A program made the translations under genes and the position numbers. Below, one piece after another: positions 16,620-23,388 of a stretch of 64,000 bases of DNA (position 1 is the stretch's first letter; each line of letters starts with the position of its first letter). Source of the stretch: Obrimoposthia wandeli (Eukaryota); the NCBI GenBank assembly GCA_977020255.1, contig CDROCS010001764.1, positions 1 through 64,000 on the forward strand. Direction: 5' to 3'. The notes under the pieces are model-generated. The model saw only the letters and a list, made by a program, of their open reading frames with translations, had not been told where the DNA came from and did no database searches.

Positions 16620-17963
16620 CTATTGGTAAAACTCAAAGCAGTCTTTTCCTTGCTCTTTAGCGCGGTACATCGCCGAGTCGGCCATTGTCAGTAACTCTTG
16701 CATATCTCTAGTATCTGTCGGGAACGCACTAACCCCAATGCTAGCGCTAACTGTCAGATTACTTACCTGATCTTCGAAAGAAACCCTACAAAGCTTCAAC
16801 GTGTTATTGGCTATTCTGCCCAATATTTCCTTAGTTGCCCCCGCTATCACAAGTACAAATTCATCACCGCCAAAACGCACCACTAAATCACCTTGGCGTA
16901 GCGAATGTGTTAAATTTTTTGCCACATATTGTAACAACAGGTCACCTTGCTGGTGACCCAAGGTGTCGTTTATTGCCTTAAATCCATCTAAATCAATAAA
17001 TAGCACCCCCACCGTTTCCTTGTGCTGTATAGCTCTTGCGCGAATCAACGGTAAATGCTGTTCTAACATTCTTCGATTACCCAACCCTGTCAAAGGATCA
17101 GTTAGCGCCTGCTCCTTCCGTTTTATATGCTTCGAACGGTAATGACGCAGTGCCGTCGCCAGTAGAGCAATCAGTGATAGCGCTACAGTAATGTAAAAAA
17201 ACAACCACAACTGCTGACGCTCAATCCGGCGATCTAATTCTTCCAGATAGCGAGAAAACATCATATTTAATTGCGCTAGCTTTTCTTGCATACCCGAGTG
17301 GGCCAACTCCTCATTGAATTGAATGCTGGTTTTACGGTAATTCAAAAAAAAGGATAGATGCTTCATCGCATTAAACCAATCGCGTTGAAAGGGCTGAGAA
17401 AGCCTAGAGACATCAACCAAATTCCGTCCCGATCCTAGAGGTGTGTAGACTAATTGATACGTTAGAGCGTGTAACATTTCCTGTTCTAAGAAATGCTTTA
17501 GCTCGCTACCTTTAGCACTCGTTATTTCTTGATTACGCACAGCTCGTTCAATGTTTACATAAAGCAATTTTGATATTTGAGGTAAATAATTTACGGAGTT
17601 ACGCAGCAGAGCACTATTGGACTTGAGCGCCTCTATCAGCTCATATTTTTGTTCGAGTATTTCTTTTATCGGCTCTATAGCCAACATCAATTCCTGCGGT
17701 AATCGTGGCGGCTGATCTAGTGCGGTTAGCATTTGAGTATAAGCGGCATTCAATCCGTCATAATTGCGAAAATTCCAACTATCAAGTAACAGTAATTGAC
17801 GATCCAATTGGGTATCAAACTGCTCTAATTCACTTAGATATTGGTGAATTTCATCCTGATTATGCGTCAGGGATACGCGCTGTGCCTGATAATAGTAACC
17901 ACCTAATATCAGTGTGACAAACAGTACTGCTGCGAAGCCCCACTGTAGTACTTTAGACATCAA
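16620..17963 (-). CDS. Membrane diguanylate cyclase with periplasmic DAHL-like sensor domain
   Basis: TM1, LEQFDTQLD...RNYDGL...KSNSALLRNSVNYLP (DAHL-like), TM2, DPLTGLGNRR, DLDGFK, RQGD I-site, RFGGDEF; no EAL domain. Confidence 0.85.
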   Translation of the reverse strand: MMSKVLQWGFAAVLFVTLILGGYYYQAQRVSLTHNQDEIHQYLSELEQFDTQLDRQLLLLDSWNFRNYDGLNAAYTQMLTALDQPPRLPQELMLAIEPIKEILEQKYELIEALKSNSALLRNSVNYLPQISKLLYVNIERAVRNQEITSAKGSELKHFLEQEMLHALTYQLVYTPLGSGRNLVDVSRLSQPFQRDWFNAMKHLSFFLNYRKTSIQFNEELAHSGMQEKLAQLNMMFSRYLEELDRRIERQQLWLFFYITVALSLIALLATALRHYRSKHIKRKEQALTDPLTGLGNRRMLEQHLPLIRARAIQHKETVGVLFIDLDGFKAINDTLGHQQGDLLLQYVAKNLTHSLRQGDLVVRFGGDEFVLVIAGATKEILGRIANNTLKLCRVSFEDQVSNLTVSASIGVSAFPTDTRDMQELLTMADSAMYRAKEQGKDCFEFYQ

Positions 17964-18910
17964 GGCATAAGCTCCGGATGCGGCAAACCGGTTAAAGTGC
18001 GCAAAAAGGCTTCAATTAATGCGGTGTCTCTATCGTTGATAGTCGTTCCAAGCTGATGTTTAGCCATCAATTTAATAGTTTCGGCTAAGCTGCCGATTGA
18101 TCCATCGTGCAGATAGGGGGCCGTTTTTGCAACGTTACGTAAACTGGGCACCCGAAAAACCTGTTTATCCTTATCGCGATTAGTCAAAAGAAAACGGCCT
18201 AATGCTGTGTTGCTGTCACTTAGTGGGTAAGCTTTTACCACACCCAATTTTTGCACTAAGTTACCACCTATGTTCTTACCTTGGTGACAAGCTATACAAC
18301 CAAAGCTTTTAAACAAGGTATAACCTTGCTTCGCGGCTAGTGATATGGCGCGTTGATCACCTTGTAAATATTTATCAAAATCAGAAGGTGTAATGAGCGC
18401 ACTCTCATAAGCTGCTATCGCCTGGGTGACAAGCTCAGCGGTGATCTCCGCTTGATATACTTGTTCGAATCTATTGCGATATGCAGTATCCGCTTTAAGC
18501 CTAGCGAGTATCTCTAACCAACCGATGCCCATTACTTTTTCACCGCTGACCAACCTTTCAATTTGATCACTGGGTGAATTAATATTCGCCAGCCAACCCA
18601 ACTTATAAGTAGCCGTTAGATTAAAGATCGACGTCGAATTACGGGCGGTGAAATCGCCATTGAATTGAATTGGCCGAGGGGCGGCACTACTACCGCCATA
18701 GTCGAACTGGTGGCAGCTAGAGCAACTGGTTTTACGATCAGCTGATAGAATAGTGTCGAAAAAAAGTATTTTCCCCAAACGCATTTCATCTGTGATTTTG
18801 TCTGGCCATTTAACCGCTGAGATTGGAGGACCTTCGTGCGCGATTAGACGGCCGCTTAAAACAGCGGCTAAGCTAAAAATTATGGCAACGAAAAAGCATC
18901 GTAATCTCAA
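17960..18910 (-). CDS. Di-haem cytochrome c peroxidase family protein (atypical active site)
   Basis: Signal peptide, LGKILFFD..LS, CSSCH, CIACH, FRVPSLRNV, TAPYLHDGS. Its stop overlaps the DGC start (ATGA). Confidence 0.85.
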   Translation of the reverse strand: MRLRCFFVAIIFSLAAVLSGRLIAHEGPPISAVKWPDKITDEMRLGKILFFDTILSADRKTSCSSCHQFDYGGSSAAPRPIQFNGDFTARNSTSIFNLTATYKLGWLANINSPSDQIERLVSGEKVMGIGWLEILARLKADTAYRNRFEQVYQAEITAELVTQAIAAYESALITPSDFDKYLQGDQRAISLAAKQGYTLFKSFGCIACHQGKNIGGNLVQKLGVVKAYPLSDSNTALGRFLLTNRDKDKQVFRVPSLRNVAKTAPYLHDGSIGSLAETIKLMAKHQLGTTINDRDTALIEAFLRTLTGLPHPELMP

Positions 18911-18939: not shown

Positions 18940-19185
18940 TTAGCTGTTTTCTCTTTGCTCTAACTCAGTCAGTCGTAGCTCAAGAGCTTCAACTTTCGAT
19001 CTTGTGCGCTGTAAGACAGCCGCTTGGGCGTCAAATTCATCACGCGTGACCAAATCCATTTTCGCAAATGCGCTCTGCAGTAATGCTTTAACTTGATCTT
19101 GCCCTGGCAACTCTCCTCCCTTAGGCAAGTTGTTAATCAAATTAGAAAACTGCTGTGACAATCCTTCTTTTAACGATTCATTCAT
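18940..19185 (-). CDS. ubiK: Ubiquinone biosynthesis accessory factor UbiK (YqiC/BMFP)
   Basis: MDLVTRDEFDAQAAVLQRTRSKVEALE coiled-coil signature; divergent from amt/glnK as is common in gammaproteobacteria. Confidence 0.9.
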   Translation of the reverse strand: MNESLKEGLSQQFSNLINNLPKGGELPGQDQVKALLQSAFAKMDLVTRDEFDAQAAVLQRTRSKVEALELRLTELEQRENS

Positions 19186-19394: not shown

Positions 19395-19462
19395 TATACC
19401 CATTTGATTATGCATAAATCACCCCCCTTAACAACACATCGAAAGACTCATTGGAGATCAAC

Positions 19463-20725
19463 ATGGAATCCATCGTTAGCACGTTATCTGCTGACCTAAC
19501 CCAGCTAAAATATGCATTAGATACTTTTTATTTTTTAATCTGCGGTGCCCTTGTTATGTGGATGGCCGCAGGCTTTGCCATGCTAGAGGCGGGATTAGTT
19601 CGCGCGAAAAACACGACTGAAATATTGACCAAAAACATTTCCCTCTATGCTATTGCCTGCACAATGTATTTATTGTGCGGTTACGCACTTATGTACAGCT
19701 CGGACCCCGGCGGAGTTATGCCCAATTTCGGCGTATTAATCGGCGAGGAGCATAGCTTAAATGCAGCCTTGTCCGAGGAAGATGCACCGTATTACTCAGC
19801 TCGCTCGGATTTCTTTTTCCAAGTAGTCTTTGTCGCCACAGCGATGTCGATTGTCTCTGGTGCCGTGGCCGAGCGTATGAAGCTCACCGCGTTCTTAATC
19901 TTCACTGTCATTATGACTGGCTTTATCTACCCGGTAAGCGGTTATTGGACTTGGGGGGGTGGTTTCTTAAAAACCGCTGGATTTTCTGATTTTGCTGGAT
20001 CCGGCATAGTGCATATGGCGGGTGCAGCAGCAGCCTTAGCGGGAGTGCTATTACTAGGTTCCCGCCGAGGGAAGTATGGACGAAAAGGTCAAGTTAACGC
20101 CATCCCCGGCGCCAATCTACCCCTTGCCACATTGGGAACGTTCATCCTGTGGTTTGGCTGGTTCGGTTTTAACGGCGGATCCGAGTTGAAAATGTCGGAT
20201 GTCGGTGAGGCAAACTCTGTGGCTCAAATTTTTGTCAATACCAATGCCGCAGCGGCGGCTGGTGTCATTACCGCGTTACTTTGCTCACGTTTTTTGTTCA
20301 AAAAAACTGACCTCACCATGCTATTAAACGGCGCATTAGCTGGCCTAGTGGCAATTACAGCCGATCCGTTATCACCCAGTGCGATGGGTGCTGTATTTAT
20401 CGGTGCTATTGCTGGTGTTTTGGTGGTATTTGCCATTCTCGCTTTAGACAAGCTGCGTATAGATGATCCTGTTGGTGCTATTTCGGTGCACGGCGTGGTT
20501 GGCATATGGGGACTACTCGCTGTGCCTCTGAATAATGCCGACGCTAGCTTTAGCGCCCAGATTCTTGGCATTGTCGTTATTTTCATCTGGTGTTTCGGCG
20601 CTAGTTTAGCCGTGTGGAAAATACTCAAAGAGACATTGGGTATTCGAGTGAGCCAGGAAGAGGAATACATTGGTAGCGATATCGTTGAATGCGGTATGGA
20701 TGCTTACCCTGAATTCAAAAACTAA
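19463..20725 (+). CDS. amtB: Ammonium transporter (ATG 19463 with GGAG RBS preferred over TTG 19451)
   Basis: FFFQVVF, DFAGSGIVH, WFGWFGFNGGS, IDDPVGAISVHG (twin-His). Confidence 0.95.
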   Translation: MESIVSTLSADLTQLKYALDTFYFLICGALVMWMAAGFAMLEAGLVRAKNTTEILTKNISLYAIACTMYLLCGYALMYSSDPGGVMPNFGVLIGEEHSLNAALSEEDAPYYSARSDFFFQVVFVATAMSIVSGAVAERMKLTAFLIFTVIMTGFIYPVSGYWTWGGGFLKTAGFSDFAGSGIVHMAGAAAALAGVLLLGSRRGKYGRKGQVNAIPGANLPLATLGTFILWFGWFGFNGGSELKMSDVGEANSVAQIFVNTNAAAAAGVITALLCSRFLFKKTDLTMLLNGALAGLVAITADPLSPSAMGAVFIGAIAGVLVVFAILALDKLRIDDPVGAISVHGVVGIWGLLAVPLNNADASFSAQILGIVVIFIWCFGASLAVWKILKETLGIRVSQEEEYIGSDIVECGMDAYPEFKN

Positions 20726-20888
20726 CTGTCTAGAAAGACGATTGCAATTGTCGCTACAAGCCCTGTAACAGCCGCTATTATTATAGCGAATATGTGCACT
20801 TTCTCGAGCCTCAAAGAACAGGCTTGGGATTGGTGATTCATATATTGCATAAAAAGCAGTATACTTATGCCGCTTTTTATAGTGCTAA

Positions 20889-21287
<399 letters not shown>

Positions 21288-21312
21288 CTTTATACCCCCA
21301 GAGCAGTAGTCA

Positions 21313-22680
21313 TTATTGCTCTGGGTGCGCTTTTAATACTATTTTTGCACACAGCCCCTGCGGCTTTCTATTACTCAGTGTGAGCACCCCGCCCTGCATA
21401 TGTATAGCTTGTTTAGCGATACCTAAGCCTAAACCGTGGCCTTCAACATTAATATCTAATCTGAAAAATGGGTCACATAGTTTCGCCAGTGTATGCTCAG
21501 GCACACCGGGGCCATTATCCATCACCTCGACAATCACTTGATCATTAGCTGCTTGAGAGACTTTGATTTCAATCAAAGCCAGCTCCCCAGAATATTTCAA
21601 GGCATTGTGTAAAACATTGCCAAGCGCTCTTTCAAGTAGCGTACTAGATCCCAAAACCGCAGTGACGTCAGGACTAAACTCAAGCGAAATACTCTGATCG
21701 TGACTCGCTAGGTATTGACTGTCATTTATTAATTTATCTAACAGCGGTTGTAGCAGTACCGGTTGATTGCTGTGTTGTTGTTGATCCAATTTTGCCAGTG
21801 AGAGCAACTCATCTATCAGCAGAGTTAGACGCTCACACTCTATCTGCACGCGGTTTACTGCTGGGTGATCAATCCCTATTTGCTGTTCAATAATACCTGA
21901 GGCAGCCATTAACCTTGCCAACGGCGCTCGTAATTCATGTGATACGTTTTGAAACAGATTTTGCTGTCCAATTAATGTCTTTTCAACATATTCAGCCATC
22001 TGATTGAGTTCACGAGCAAAATCACCAATTTCATCACCCCGGCGCTGTAAGACCTGAGCAGTACGCTGGCTAAAATCCCCACTGTGTAAACGTGCGACAT
22101 GTCGGCGTAATTGATTAATAGGCCTGACAACAATGGCGCTAATAATAAAGCTGGCTAAAGTCGAGCTAATAAAGATCAGCAATGCTTGCAGTGAAAAAAT
22201 AAACCCCTGCCAACGCTTGAAGCTCCCATCAGGGTGTTTGAGATCAATTTCCACTGTGTATTTTTGATCACTCTCAGAGCGCATGTCGAAGGTCAGGCTA
22301 TTGGTACTCTTTACATTCTTATTACCGACAAGAAGCCTCCCTTTATCATCGTAAATTCTAACCGGTGGGCGGTTTTTACGGTGATTAAAGAAAGAGAGCA
22401 CTTTGTTATTTTTCAGAAGCTGCCAATCTTTTTTCGCCAATTCTCTACGTTGTTTACGCTTAAGTAAACGCTGAAAATCTGGATTATTCTCATAGTAGTT
22501 TAACAAACGCTCTATATCTGAGCGCACTTGATACTTTACTTTTTCTTCAAAACTATCTCGCTCGGCGAGTTCGGCAATAACTAACATAGTCACTAGCATA
22601 ACCACGGCGCTGGAGAGCCAGAGCGAGAGAAATATTTTCCAAAACAGGCGATTAAGATTAGGTAACTTCAACGACTTCAT
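21313..22680 (-). CDS. Sensor histidine kinase, CpxA-like
   Basis: LFWKIFL N-terminus, two TMs, HAMP, SHELRAPLARL H-box, NVLHNALKY, DNGPGV, GLGLGI. Confidence 0.85.
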   Translation of the reverse strand: MKSLKLPNLNRLFWKIFLSLWLSSAVVMLVTMLVIAELAERDSFEEKVKYQVRSDIERLLNYYENNPDFQRLLKRKQRRELAKKDWQLLKNNKVLSFFNHRKNRPPVRIYDDKGRLLVGNKNVKSTNSLTFDMRSESDQKYTVEIDLKHPDGSFKRWQGFIFSLQALLIFISSTLASFIISAIVVRPINQLRRHVARLHSGDFSQRTAQVLQRRGDEIGDFARELNQMAEYVEKTLIGQQNLFQNVSHELRAPLARLMAASGIIEQQIGIDHPAVNRVQIECERLTLLIDELLSLAKLDQQQHSNQPVLLQPLLDKLINDSQYLASHDQSISLEFSPDVTAVLGSSTLLERALGNVLHNALKYSGELALIEIKVSQAANDQVIVEVMDNGPGVPEHTLAKLCDPFFRLDINVEGHGLGLGIAKQAIHMQGGVLTLSNRKPQGLCAKIVLKAHPEQ

Positions 22681-23388
22681 CTACTCGCTACCCCTCACTG
22701 CAAATAGATAACCGACACCGCGTATCGTTTTAATTATTTCGGTGTCTGGTAGATATACCGCCAATTTTTGACGTACCCGACTCAAGTGAACATCAATGGC
22801 TCTGTCGTAGGCCGTTAACGGTCGGTGTAGTACCTTTTCCGTCAACTCTGACTTGCTGACGATAACCCCTGGCTGTGACATTAACACTTGTAGTACGTTA
22901 AATTCAGCACTGGTTAGTTCCAGCTCACTACTTGCTACACTGACTTCACGCGTGGCGCTATTAAGCTCAATTCCCATCAAATTAATATTGCTATCTACTA
23001 TTCGAGGGGTATTGTTTAATGTAGTGGTACGGCGAAGAACTGCACGCACTCGTGCTAATAACTCTCTGGGGTTGCAAGGTTTAGCTAAGTAGTCATCCGC
23101 ACCCATTTCCAGACCTAAAATTCGATCAATTTCACCCCCTTTACCCGTTAACATAATCACTGGCATTACATTATCCGGGCGCAGCTGCTGTAATAGCTCC
23201 AACCCCGTCATATCTGGCATCATTATGTCGAAAACCGCAATATCAAAACGCCGCTGTTTCAATATTTGTAAAGCGCTTTGAGCATTATTTGCCACCGTTG
23301 TACTCACCCCTTCATAATCCAAATAGCTCGCCAACAGCGCGCTTAATTCTCTATCATCATCTACTAGTAGCAGCTGCACTTGTGTCAT
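22681..23388 (-). CDS. OmpR-family response regulator, CpxR-like
   Basis: LLVDDD, FDIMMP, GADDYLAKP, RAIDVHLSRVRQKL, IKTIRGVGY. Confidence 0.88.
   Translation of the reverse strand: MTQVQLLLVDDDRELSALLASYLDYEGVSTTVANNAQSALQILKQRRFDIAVFDIMMPDMTGLELLQQLRPDNVMPVIMLTGKGGEIDRILGLEMGADDYLAKPCNPRELLARVRAVLRRTTTLNNTPRIVDSNINLMGIELNSATREVSVASSELELTSAEFNVLQVLMSQPGVIVSKSELTEKVLHRPLTAYDRAIDVHLSRVRQKLAVYLPDTEIIKTIRGVGYLFAVRGSE

What the first reader, a model, noticed from the sequence alone, without database searches (positions are those of the whole stretch)
16620..18910. Candidate new signalling module: di-haem peroxidase-like protein coupled to a DAHL diguanylate cyclase
Seen: a secreted di-haem CcP-family gene overlaps (ATGA) the start of a 2-TM diguanylate cyclase with a periplasmic DAHL-like domain, intact GGDEF and RxxD I-site. 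The pair forms a compact two-gene unit between xdhA and ubiK. Inference: the haem protein is a periplasmic co-sensor that docks on the DAHL domain and converts a redox, peroxide or gas signal into c-di-GMP output. I know of no characterised mechanism for such a pair; novelty needs a literature check.
Basis: partly seen in the sequence, partly recalled or inferred. Interest (0 to 1): 0.75.

Follow-up and report, generated by a model that had tools for sequence, protein, structure and literature searches.

The report
Haem peroxidase-like partner of DAHL sensors
A secreted two-haem peroxidase-like protein and a membrane c-di-GMP synthase with a DAHL sensor domain form one overlapping gene pair. 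The same peroxidase-plus-DAHL pairing turned up next to every DAHL receptor I could examine, across several phyla and whatever the receptor's output, so the haem protein is probably part of the sensor.

Summary
On the minus strand, a secreted di-haem bCcP-family gene (17960-18910) overlaps a 2-TM DAHL-GGDEF diguanylate cyclase gene (16620-17963). The junction reads TTGATG, not ATGA.

- All 6 contexts of the window's rare subfamily carry the pair.
- 5 of 5 distant DAHL receptors have it, and so do 2 of 2 'generic' nearest CcP relatives.
- 80 of 80 genome loci and 78 of 78 metagenome loci with enough upstream DNA have a CcP-like gene directly upstream on the same strand.
- That is 170 pairs, which reduce to about 25 lineages at 70% identity. 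Most pairs overlap by 4 nt.
- The taxa include Gamma-, Beta- and Alphaproteobacteria, Armatimonadota and a cyanobacterium.
- Receptor outputs vary: histidine kinase, hybrid kinase, GGDEF, GGDEF-EAL and MCP.

In the partners, both haem sites, the inter-haem Trp and the Met ligand are invariant. The distal His is absent, and the catalytic Glu is lost in about half the lineages, including the window protein (Val126).

Best reading: the CcP-like protein is the periplasmic haem input of the DAHL receptor. Docking and the identity of the signal are not shown.

Prior art is limited. The C. jejuni docA-docB/Tlp10 pair is known, and one 2026 paper speculates that the two proteins interact. The scan also noted similar pairs on other DNA of this data set (s1-211153, s1-224276), which I did not check.

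The parts
17960..18910 (-). Gene for a secreted di-haem bCcP-family protein (316 aa), the proposed periplasmic haem co-sensor
   Evidence: ORF. Pfam CCP_MauG at 3.8e-37. Best solved relative is S. oneidensis CcpA 3o5c at 7e-56. It belongs to a tight subfamily, P0001-P0018.
18839..18910 (-). Signal peptide (residues 1-24, MRLRCFFVAIIFSLAAVLSGRLIA)
   Evidence: It is the only hydrophobic segment of the protein. It has a basic N-end and an LIA-HE site. Cleavage is inferred, not tested.
18710..18724 (-). First CxxCH (CSSCH, residues 63-67), the site of the N-terminal low-potential ('peroxidatic') haem
   Evidence: Invariant in 25 of 25 non-redundant partners.
18533..18535 (-). Val126 at the position of the catalytic Glu114 of P. 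aeruginosa CcP
   Evidence: The alignment to 3o5c pairs GEKVM with NPKEM. Among 25 lineages the position is E in 13, V in 6, L in 2 and A, I, G or T in 1 each.
18284..18298 (-). Second CxxCH (CIACH, residues 205-209), the site of the C-terminal high-potential electron-transfer haem
   Evidence: His209 and the Met282 ligand equivalent are conserved.
17963..17983 (-). Subfamily-specific C-terminal tail PHPELMP, a possible docking element
   Evidence: All 19 members of the window's subfamily end in HP(E/D/T)L(M/L/I/S)P, preceded by P or V. The other CcP-likes do not. The function is unknown.
17958..17963 (-). Gene junction TTGATG, where the stop of the haem gene overlaps the start of the cyclase gene
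   Evidence: A 4-nt overlap was found at 80 of 89 related junctions.
16620..17963 (-). Gene for the 2-TM DAHL-GGDEF diguanylate cyclase (447 aa)
   Evidence: The AF2 full-length model has mean pLDDT 82.6.
17217..17861 (-). Periplasmic DAHL domain (residues 35-249) between TM1 (1-23) and TM2 (250-274)
   Evidence: Pfam PF19443 at 57.9 bits against a cut-off of 38. The AF2 model has pLDDT 92.3 and six helices. Best fold matches are McpS HBM at Z 15.1 and TorS at Z 13.2.
16641..17108 (-). Cytoplasmic GGDEF domain (residues 286-441), with GGDEF at 16857-16871 and the I-site RQGD at 16887-16898
   Evidence: Pfam GGDEF at 4.4e-46. Motifs read. The DxD, FK, ND, GH and GD positions are invariant in the subfamily.
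18940..19185 (-). BMFP-family, UbiK-like gene 29 nt upstream, possibly co-transcribed (context only)
   Evidence: BMFP at 6e-21 in Pfam; best NCBIfam match UbiK but below that model's cut-off, 63 vs 100 bits. No terminator-like site lies between the genes, and the only promoter-like site upstream is at 19434-19407. The same neighbour is present in L001, L002 and L005 but not in L003 or L006.

Best explanation
The two genes form one sensory unit. The di-haem CcP-like protein is exported to the periplasm, receives two c-type haems, and acts as the signal-capturing subunit of the membrane cyclase. The N-terminal haem has no distal His ligand, so it is predicted to stay open. The C-terminal His/Met haem and the inter-haem Trp keep it wired to periplasmic electron donors. 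A change at the haems, most likely oxidation by H2O2 balanced against re-reduction by periplasmic cytochromes, or else binding of a small gas ligand, alters how the protein contacts the bimodular helical DAHL domain. That change travels down the continuous helix DAHL-TM2-GGDEF (no HAMP domain lies between them) and sets c-di-GMP synthesis. The RxxD I-site adds product inhibition.

Shown: the gene pair, the domains, the residues, and the family-wide, output-independent, overlapping linkage of CcP-like genes to DAHL receptor genes.

Inferred: export, haem loading, physical docking, the identity of the signal, and the direction of regulation.
For: 1. The pair is present in all six contexts of the window's subfamily, and the flanking genes differ between contexts.
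2. Distant DAHL receptors with kinase, hybrid-kinase or GGDEF outputs all have a CCP_MauG gene directly upstream: 5 of 5.
3. The two sampled 'generic' nearest CcP relatives, from Inquilinus and a cyanobacterium, are each followed by a DAHL kinase.
4. 80 of 80 genome loci and 78 of 78 metagenome loci with upstream DNA have the same arrangement. Together these are 170 pairs, or 25 clusters at 70% identity.
5. The outputs include HK, PAS-HK, hybrid HK, GGDEF, PAS-GGDEF-EAL and MCP.
6. A 4-nt start/stop overlap occurs at 80 of 89 junctions.
7. The CcP tree and the DAHL tree share their clades, and the window's subfamily sits on the longest stem in both.
8. Both CxxCH motifs, Trp94, Met275 and Asn79 are conserved. 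The distal His is absent in 24 of 25 lineages and Glu114 is lost in 12 of 25. So selection keeps the haem wiring rather than the catalytic acid-base residue.
9. The DAHL fold matches helical sensors that work through periplasmic partner proteins: TorS-TorT at Z 12-13 and QseE-QseG at Z 11.9.
10. One helix runs from the DAHL domain through TM2 to residue 286.
11. In the literature, DocA does not contribute to H2O2 resistance, yet docA and docB mutants both colonise chicks poorly.
Against: - No interaction, haem-loading or activity data exist for any member.
- About half of the lineages, including all the Pseudomonas ones, keep a full peroxidase active site, so the protein could simply be an enzyme.
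- The Tlp10 DAHL domain is reported to bind several small ligands directly (PMC9796306). That needs no partner protein.
- Linked genes are expected to give congruent trees, so the tree result is weak evidence for contact.
- The loci are heavily biased towards Pseudomonas and were selected with a single peptide pattern. DAHL genes without a CcP neighbour may exist among the 579 representative clusters that I did not sample.
Confidence: 0.6

Rival explanations
1. The haem protein is an ordinary periplasmic peroxidase that is merely co-expressed with the receptor. The DAHL domain senses small molecules on its own, and the enzyme only detoxifies peroxide, or respires it, under the same conditions.
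For: It is closest to bona fide peroxidases: 3o5c at 7e-56, and the Pseudomonas partner to 1iqc at 7e-77. Glu114, Gln104, Trp94 and Met275 are all kept in 13 of 25 lineages. Direct ligand binding is reported for the Tlp10 DAHL domain.
Against: The gene is always upstream of the receptor gene and usually overlaps it, with every kind of output, including MCPs, which regulate no genes. The catalytic Glu is lost in 12 of 25 lineages, including the window protein. DocA gives no H2O2 resistance.
Confidence: 0.2
2. The haem protein is a MauG/MbnH-like maturation enzyme that oxidatively modifies a residue of the DAHL domain, for example the near-invariant Tyr or His. That modification would create or reset the sensor.
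For: The best NCBIfam names are MbnH (3e-42) and MauG (6e-33), both far below their cut-offs. MauG-type genes usually sit beside the genes of their substrates (my own knowledge). The DAHL domain has near-invariant Tyr44, Asp45 and His178 despite about 20% overall identity.
Against: The high-potential haem ligand is Met (Met282, conserved in 24 of 25 lineages), not the Tyr of MauG (the MauG ligand is from my own knowledge). Similarity to MauG chains is only about 1e-12 and covers residues 134-213.
Confidence: 0.12
3. The adjacency is a local accident of this genome and has no functional meaning.
For: None was found. In the window, the pair shares a possible transcript with the unrelated upstream BMFP (UbiK-like) gene.
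Against: The same arrangement appears in 170 of 170 informative loci across several phyla, with unrelated flanking genes.
Confidence: 0.01

Closest known systems
Campylobacter jejuni DocA (Cj0020c, CcpA1) with DocB/Tlp10 (Cj0019c)
   Same: A periplasmic di-haem CcP-family gene lies directly upstream of a DAHL-domain receptor gene. It overlaps that gene and is translationally coupled to it (PMC13462783; DAHL was defined on Tlp10). The peroxidase plays no role in H2O2 resistance, and both mutants colonise poorly. An interaction 'perhaps to signal peroxide availability' has been suggested but not tested.
   Different: The output there is an MCP (chemotaxis), not a diguanylate cyclase. DocA is described as phylogenetically apart from typical di-haem CcPs (PMC5656828). 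I could not obtain its sequence, so I did not test whether it belongs to the same CcP clade as the window protein.
TorT-TorS (also QseG-QseE and XylFII-LytS): helical periplasmic sensor domains that read a partner protein
   Same: The DAHL model superposes on the bimodular helical TorS sensor domain (3i9w at Z 13.2; the TorS-TorT complex 3o1h at Z 12.2) and on QseE of the QseE-QseG complex (Z 11.9). In those systems the signal is captured by a separate periplasmic protein (my own knowledge).
   Different: The partner here is a di-haem c-type cytochrome, not a solute-binding protein or a lipoprotein. No complex has been shown. Z-scores of this size are common among helical bundles.
YfiR-YfiN (DgcN/TpbB) and the H-NOX or NosP haem sensors paired with cyclases or kinases
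   Same: A separate small protein controls a diguanylate cyclase. YfiR acts from the periplasm and is redox-sensitive. H-NOX and NosP are haem sensors encoded next to their effector (my own knowledge). The window's GGDEF domain scores 9.6e-43 against the DgcN/YfiN model but lies below its cut-off.
   Different: YfiR has no haem, and YfiN has a different periplasmic domain plus a HAMP domain. H-NOX and NosP bind b-type haem in the cytoplasm. Here the sensor would be a periplasmic c-type di-haem protein of the peroxidase fold.
Canonical bacterial di-haem cytochrome c peroxidases (S. oneidensis CcpA 3o5c, N. europaea 1iqc, P. aeruginosa 1eb7)
   Same: Same fold and length. Both haem sites, Trp94, Gln104, the Ca-site Asn79/Thr256/Pro258 and the Met275 ligand are all present.
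   Different: The distal His71 is replaced (Phe83). The catalytic Glu114 is replaced (Val126). FWDGR has become GWLAN. There is a conserved extra C-terminal tail, PHPELMP. The gene is tied to a receptor gene.

Membership tests
Bacterial di-haem cytochrome c peroxidase (bCcP; Pfam CCP_MauG) | Pfam CCP_MauG above the gathering score, and two CxxCH haem sites | tested here: met
   128.6 bits against a cut-off of 25.6. CSSCH at residue 63 and CIACH at 205.
Bacterial di-haem cytochrome c peroxidase (bCcP; Pfam CCP_MauG) | Electron-transfer wiring: inter-haem Trp94, Met275 ligand of the high-potential haem, and Ca-site residues Asn79/Thr256/Pro258 (P. aeruginosa numbering) | tested here: met
   Trp106, Met282, Asn91, Thr263 and Pro265, mapped through the 3o5c alignment.
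Bacterial di-haem cytochrome c peroxidase (bCcP; Pfam CCP_MauG) | Catalytic Glu114 (the NPxEM motif) at the peroxidatic haem | tested here: not met
   Val126 in GEKVM. The residue is lost in 12 of 25 partner lineages and kept in 13.
Bacterial di-haem cytochrome c peroxidase (bCcP; Pfam CCP_MauG) | Distal His71, which ligates the low-potential haem in the resting enzyme | tested here: not met
   Phe83 in the window protein. His occurs at this position in only 1 of 25 partner lineages.
Bacterial di-haem cytochrome c peroxidase (bCcP; Pfam CCP_MauG) | Peroxidase activity with a cytochrome c or cupredoxin donor | not testable with these tools
   Needs purified protein.
MauG / MbnH protein-modifying di-haem enzymes | NCBIfam equivalog score above the cut-off, and a Tyr axial ligand on the second haem | tested here: not met
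   TIGR04039 scores 144.8 against 362.85, and TIGR03791 scores 114.4 against 443.85. Met282 occupies the ligand position.
DAHL-domain receptor (Pfam PF19443) | Pfam DAHL above the gathering score, lying between two transmembrane helices | tested here: met
   57.9 bits against 38, residues 35-249. TM segments at 1-23 and 250-274.
DAHL-domain receptor (Pfam PF19443) | All-helical bimodular fold | tested here: met
   AF2 model with pLDDT 92.3 and six helices. McpS HBM matches at Z 15.1 over 202 residues, and TorS at Z 13.2.
GGDEF diguanylate cyclase | GGDEF domain with an intact GG(D/E)EF motif, metal- and substrate-binding residues, and an RxxD I-site | tested here: met
   Pfam at 157 bits. GGDEF at 365-369 and RQGD at 356-359. 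The DxD, FK, ND, GH and GD positions are invariant in the subfamily. Enzyme activity was not tested.
DocA-Tlp10-type CcP/DAHL gene pair | A CcP-family gene directly upstream of the DAHL receptor gene on the same strand, with overlapping stop and start | tested here: met
   The window junction is TTGATG. The arrangement is found in 170 of 170 informative loci. A 4-nt overlap occurs at 80 of 89 junctions.
DocA-Tlp10-type CcP/DAHL gene pair | The window CcP-like protein and DocA belong to one clade | not tested
PMC5656828 calls DocA atypical.
Partner-protein-dependent periplasmic sensing (TorT-TorS type) | A physical complex between the periplasmic partner and the helical sensor domain | not testable with these tools
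   Only single-chain structure prediction was available. The fold similarity to TorS (Z 12-13) is suggestive only.

The most novel reading that the evidence does not exclude
DAHL domains are not primarily small-molecule binding domains. They are the membrane-bound docking half of a widespread two-protein periplasmic haem sensor, whose other half is a dedicated clade of di-haem CcP-like proteins. Bacteria from several phyla use this one input cassette to feed peroxide or redox information into chemotaxis, two-component and c-di-GMP pathways. In lineages such as the window's, the peroxidase has lost catalysis and become a pure sensor.
Probability: 0.4. Interest if true: 0.85.

Novelty: new variant of a known kind. 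Interest (0 to 1): 0.72.

Why it matters
If the haem protein is the true input, three things follow.
- It would define a new class of periplasmic haem-based sensor, built on a c-type di-haem peroxidase fold and used with kinase, chemoreceptor and c-di-GMP outputs.
- It would explain why C. jejuni DocA is needed for gut colonisation but not for peroxide resistance.
- It would call for a second look at the ligand assignments made for the Tlp10 DAHL domain.

It would also give the many Pseudomonas DAHL kinases a testable signal. Finally, the pair offers a natural series running from catalytically intact to Glu-less partners, which is useful for studying how an enzyme turns into a sensor.

Tried and rejected
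- The word-index search with the DAHL region found only 2 close relatives. The profile search of representatives was needed instead.
- A sequence search of solved structures with the DAHL region found nothing.
A 12-sequence subset worked, but it used a single pattern and returned mostly Pseudomonas loci. The 158 loci from the two scans, together with the 12 pairs fetched by context look-up, therefore reduce to about 25 lineages in all.
- No RNA run holds the stretch, so co-transcription could not be checked and I did not use read laying.
- The promoter and terminator scan was uninformative: hits were at or below the shuffled expectation.
- Literature searches for a characterised CcP-DAHL, CcP-kinase or CcP-cyclase mechanism found none. 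The 'Dahl' hits were author names or rat strains. A guess at P. putida locus tags (PP_2943/2944) led nowhere. The Bingham-Ramos and Hendrixson 2008 paper is not held.
- I considered a Mantel-type co-evolution test and dropped it, because linked genes share one history and the test would not separate contact from linkage.
Full report
OBSERVATION

The minus strand carries two ORFs that touch.
- The upstream one is 17960-18910: 316 aa, TTG start.
- The downstream one is 16620-17963: 447 aa.

The junction reads ccTTGATGtct. The TGA stop of the first gene shares 4 nt with a TTG start, or 1 nt with the following ATG. A GGAG lies 8 nt upstream.

- An 81-aa BMFP-family gene lies upstream at 18940-19185, 29 nt away. 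Its best NCBIfam match is UbiK, at 63 bits against a cut-off of 100.
I ran no family scan on them. Their syntenic counterparts in L001 carry the xanthine-dehydrogenase-type Pfam domains.
- No terminator-like site lies inside the unit.

THE TWO PROTEINS

The first protein has one N-terminal hydrophobic segment (residues 1-24) and two CxxCH motifs. It matches Pfam CCP_MauG at 3.8e-37. It is closest to real peroxidases: S. oneidensis CcpA 3o5c at 7e-56 and N. europaea 1iqc at 4e-51. MauG chains match only at about 1e-12. The MbnH and MauG NCBIfam models score far below their cut-offs.

I mapped residues through the printed 3o5c alignment onto P. aeruginosa numbering; the numbering itself is from my own knowledge. 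The window protein keeps:
- His67 and His209, the proximal haem ligands;
- Asn91, Thr263 and Pro265, the Ca site;
- Trp106, which is Trp94;
- Gln116, which is Gln104;
- Met282, which is Met275.

It has Phe83 in place of the distal His71 and Val126 in place of the catalytic Glu114. FWDGR has become GWLAN. This agrees with the scan's separate note s1-200909.

The second protein has two hydrophobic segments, at 1-23 and 250-274.
- Pfam DAHL lies between them, at 57.9 bits against a cut-off of 38.
- A GGDEF domain follows at 4.4e-46, with an intact GGDEF motif and RQGD five residues before it.
- An AF2 model of the periplasmic part is confident (pLDDT 92.3, six helices).
- The full-length model (pLDDT 82.6) shows one unbroken helix from the last DAHL helix through TM2 to residue 286, just before the GGDEF domain, with no HAMP domain.

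THE PAIR IN THE WINDOW'S OWN SUBFAMILY

The haem protein belongs to a small, sharply separated group. Eighteen clusters score 315-404 bits (46-58% identity), and then scores drop to 256 bits or less. The cyclase's DAHL domain is just as isolated: only 4 representative clusters reach E below 1e-30 out of 1.84 billion proteins.

I looked up five members in their contigs. All five have the same arrangement, a CcP-like gene and then a DAHL-GGDEF gene with a 4-nt overlap. The flanking genes differ:
- xanthine dehydrogenase, cytochrome b562, rhomboid, RidA or EamA downstream;
- in two cases a completely different upstream region.

All 19 members end in a conserved tail, HP(E/D/T)L(M/L/I/S)P preceded by P or V (PHPELMP in the window protein). 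The other CcP-likes lack it.

THE PAIR ACROSS THE WHOLE DAHL FAMILY

This is the main result.

First, the DAHL profile found 579 representative clusters at E of 1e-3 or below. I picked five distant ones with long contigs. They were a kinase, a hybrid kinase with Hpt, a PAS-kinase-receiver, a 586-aa protein with a weak kinase C-end, and another GGDEF protein. All five have a CCP_MauG gene directly upstream. In the fifth, the contig ends inside that gene, but the remaining 63 residues are an unmistakable CcP C-terminus.

Second, I approached from the haem side. Two of the 'generic' next-best CcP relatives were looked up, and both are followed by a DAHL hybrid kinase. One is from Inquilinus (Alphaproteobacteria), where a response-regulator gene also overlaps the front of the CcP gene. 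The other is from the cyanobacterium Phormidesmis.

Third, I ran two scans with the conserved DAHL peptide FKS[HNA]NA[VI]L[RK].
- The scan of one genome per species gave 219 confirmed loci, of which 80 were fetched. My ORF calling and hmmsearch found a CcP-like ORF on the same strand, ending at the start of the DAHL gene, in 80 of 80.
- The metagenome scan gave 162 confirmed loci, 80 fetched. 78 of the 78 with enough upstream DNA show the arrangement, and the other two contigs are too short to tell.

The sample is heavily redundant, mostly Pseudomonas of the fluorescens and putida groups. The honest count is 170 pairs, reducing to 25 clusters at 70% CcP identity and 19 at 60%.

The named taxa include Pseudomonas, other Gammaproteobacteria, Janthinobacterium and Telluria (Betaproteobacteria), Inquilinus, Chthonomonadaceae and Capsulimonas (Armatimonadota) and Phormidesmis. 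From the literature, Campylobacter can be added.

The outputs seen are HisKA-HATPase, PAS-kinase, hybrid kinases, GAF-kinase-receiver, GGDEF, PAS-PAS-GGDEF-EAL and MCP. The 4-nt ATGA or GTGA overlap occurs at 80 of 89 junctions.

Trees of the CcP partners and of the DAHL domains recover the same clades. In both, the window's subfamily sits on the longest internal branch, 0.96 and 1.88 changes per column. This fits inheritance, and fast change, as a unit. Because the genes are linked, it is not independent proof of contact.

WHAT IS CONSERVED IN THE PARTNERS

Across the 25 lineages:
- both proximal His residues and Trp94 are invariant;
- Met275 is present in 24 and Asn79 in 24;
- the distal-His position holds His only once (F, I, V, S, A, L and others otherwise);
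- the catalytic Glu is kept in 13 and replaced in 12 (V, L, A, I, G, T).

Selection has therefore preserved haem binding, the inter-haem path and the electron-accepting haem. It has not preserved the resting-state ligand and, in about half the lineages, not the acid-base catalyst either. That pattern is easier to reconcile with a haem or redox sensor than with a detoxifying enzyme.

The typical partners, such as the Pseudomonas ones (best match 1iqc at 7e-77), could still turn over peroxide.

In the DAHL domain, a few polar positions are nearly invariant although overall identity is about 20%: Tyr-Asp in NYD, Glu, Lys, Asn-Ser in LRNS, Pro and one His. A constant partner or a constant ligand would explain this. 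I could not place these residues on the model because its coordinates are not exposed.

FOLD

The DAHL model matches the following:
- the McpS HBM domain, Z 15.1 over 202 residues;
- TorS, Z 13.2, and Z 12.2 for the TorS-TorT complex;
- McpZ;
- PilJ;
- QseE in its complex with QseG, Z 11.9.

Several of these sensors read a periplasmic partner protein, so a precedent for the mechanism exists. The tool warns that such Z-scores are common among helical bundles.

LITERATURE

- docA (Cj0020c), a periplasmic di-haem CcP, lies immediately upstream of docB (Tlp10) (PMC3156733).
- DocA does not contribute to H2O2 resistance, yet the mutant colonises chicks poorly (PMC4178425, PMC4518328).
- DocA is expressed independently of oxygen supply and is called phylogenetically distinct from the typical CcP Cj0358 (PMC5656828).

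I found no paper that tests this, that reports the association outside Campylobacter, or that describes a CcP-cyclase or CcP-kinase mechanism. The library is incomplete; the original Tlp10 and DocA papers are not held.

MECHANISM AND RIVALS

Best reading (confidence 0.6): the CcP-like protein is the periplasmic haem subunit of the receptor. Its always-open N-terminal haem reacts with H2O2, or binds a gas. Its His/Met haem is re-reduced by periplasmic donors. The resulting redox or conformational state is read by the DAHL domain and passed down the continuous TM2 helix to the GGDEF domain. Only the genetics and the residues are shown. Docking, the signal and the sign of regulation are inferred.

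Rivals:
- a plain peroxidase that is only co-expressed with the receptor (0.2);
- a MauG-like enzyme that modifies the DAHL domain (0.12), disfavoured by the Met ligand and by the weak similarity to MauG;
- chance adjacency (about 0.01), refuted by the survey.

NOVELTY AND LIMITS

The window pair is a diverged, Glu-less, c-di-GMP-output version of a gene pair known from Campylobacter, whose mechanism is uncharacterised. As far as the held literature shows, the new finding is that the pairing is family-wide, independent of the output domain and almost always translationally coupled.

Limits:
- the loci came from one search pattern and are biased towards Pseudomonas;
- no DocA sequence was compared;
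- there are no expression data;
- no multimer model was possible.

The scan's notes list similar pairs on other pieces of the same data set (s1-211153, s1-224276). I did not read them.

Noticed in passing
L092:3285-7527: In Inquilinus, a response-regulator gene (REC plus Trans_reg_C), the CcP-like gene and a DAHL-GAF-kinase-receiver gene form a chain of three genes with overlapping stops and starts. That is a complete two-component system built around the haem protein.
   Followed up: no
L009:4001-7659, and the JGI contig: DAHL kinases paired with a CcP-like gene are followed by REC-EAL or PAS-GGDEF-EAL genes. Several kinase-type members therefore probably also end in c-di-GMP control.
   Followed up: no
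L010:4001-5761 (P0137): This 586-aa DAHL protein has a C-terminal half of about 320 residues that matches only weakly to HATPase_c (5e-4) and MCPsignal (3e-4). It may be a very diverged or unusual output module.
   Followed up: partly
window 17963-17983, and the same position in P0001-P0018: The conserved C-terminal tail HP(E/D/T)L(M/L/I/S)P, preceded by P or V, is specific to the window's CcP-like subfamily. L011's partner ends in the similar EPLEELLP. Its role is unexplained.
   Followed up: partly
window 19451-23388, compared with L001, L002 and L005: The upstream block of ORFs (19451-20725, 20904-21287, 21313-22680 and 22681-23388), which I did not scan in the window, has the gene order and sizes of the amtB (Ammonium_transp), glnK (P-II), HAMP-kinase and OmpR-type-regulator block in three relatives. 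The downstream side is not syntenic. This helps place the window among marine Pseudomonadales-like Gammaproteobacteria.
   Followed up: no
other pieces of the same data set (notes s1-211153, s1-224276): First-stage notes describe further 'catalytically altered di-haem peroxidase plus DAHL or c-di-GMP enzyme' pairs elsewhere in this data set. One follow-up note calls a piece of it Moritella, so the 'genome' may hold several organisms or paralogous pairs.
   Followed up: no
L003 (P0015) and L011: In two partners the Met275 position is Ile (TIALYQLG, IITYYQLG), with a Tyr close by. This may be a change of axial ligand on the second haem.
   Followed up: no
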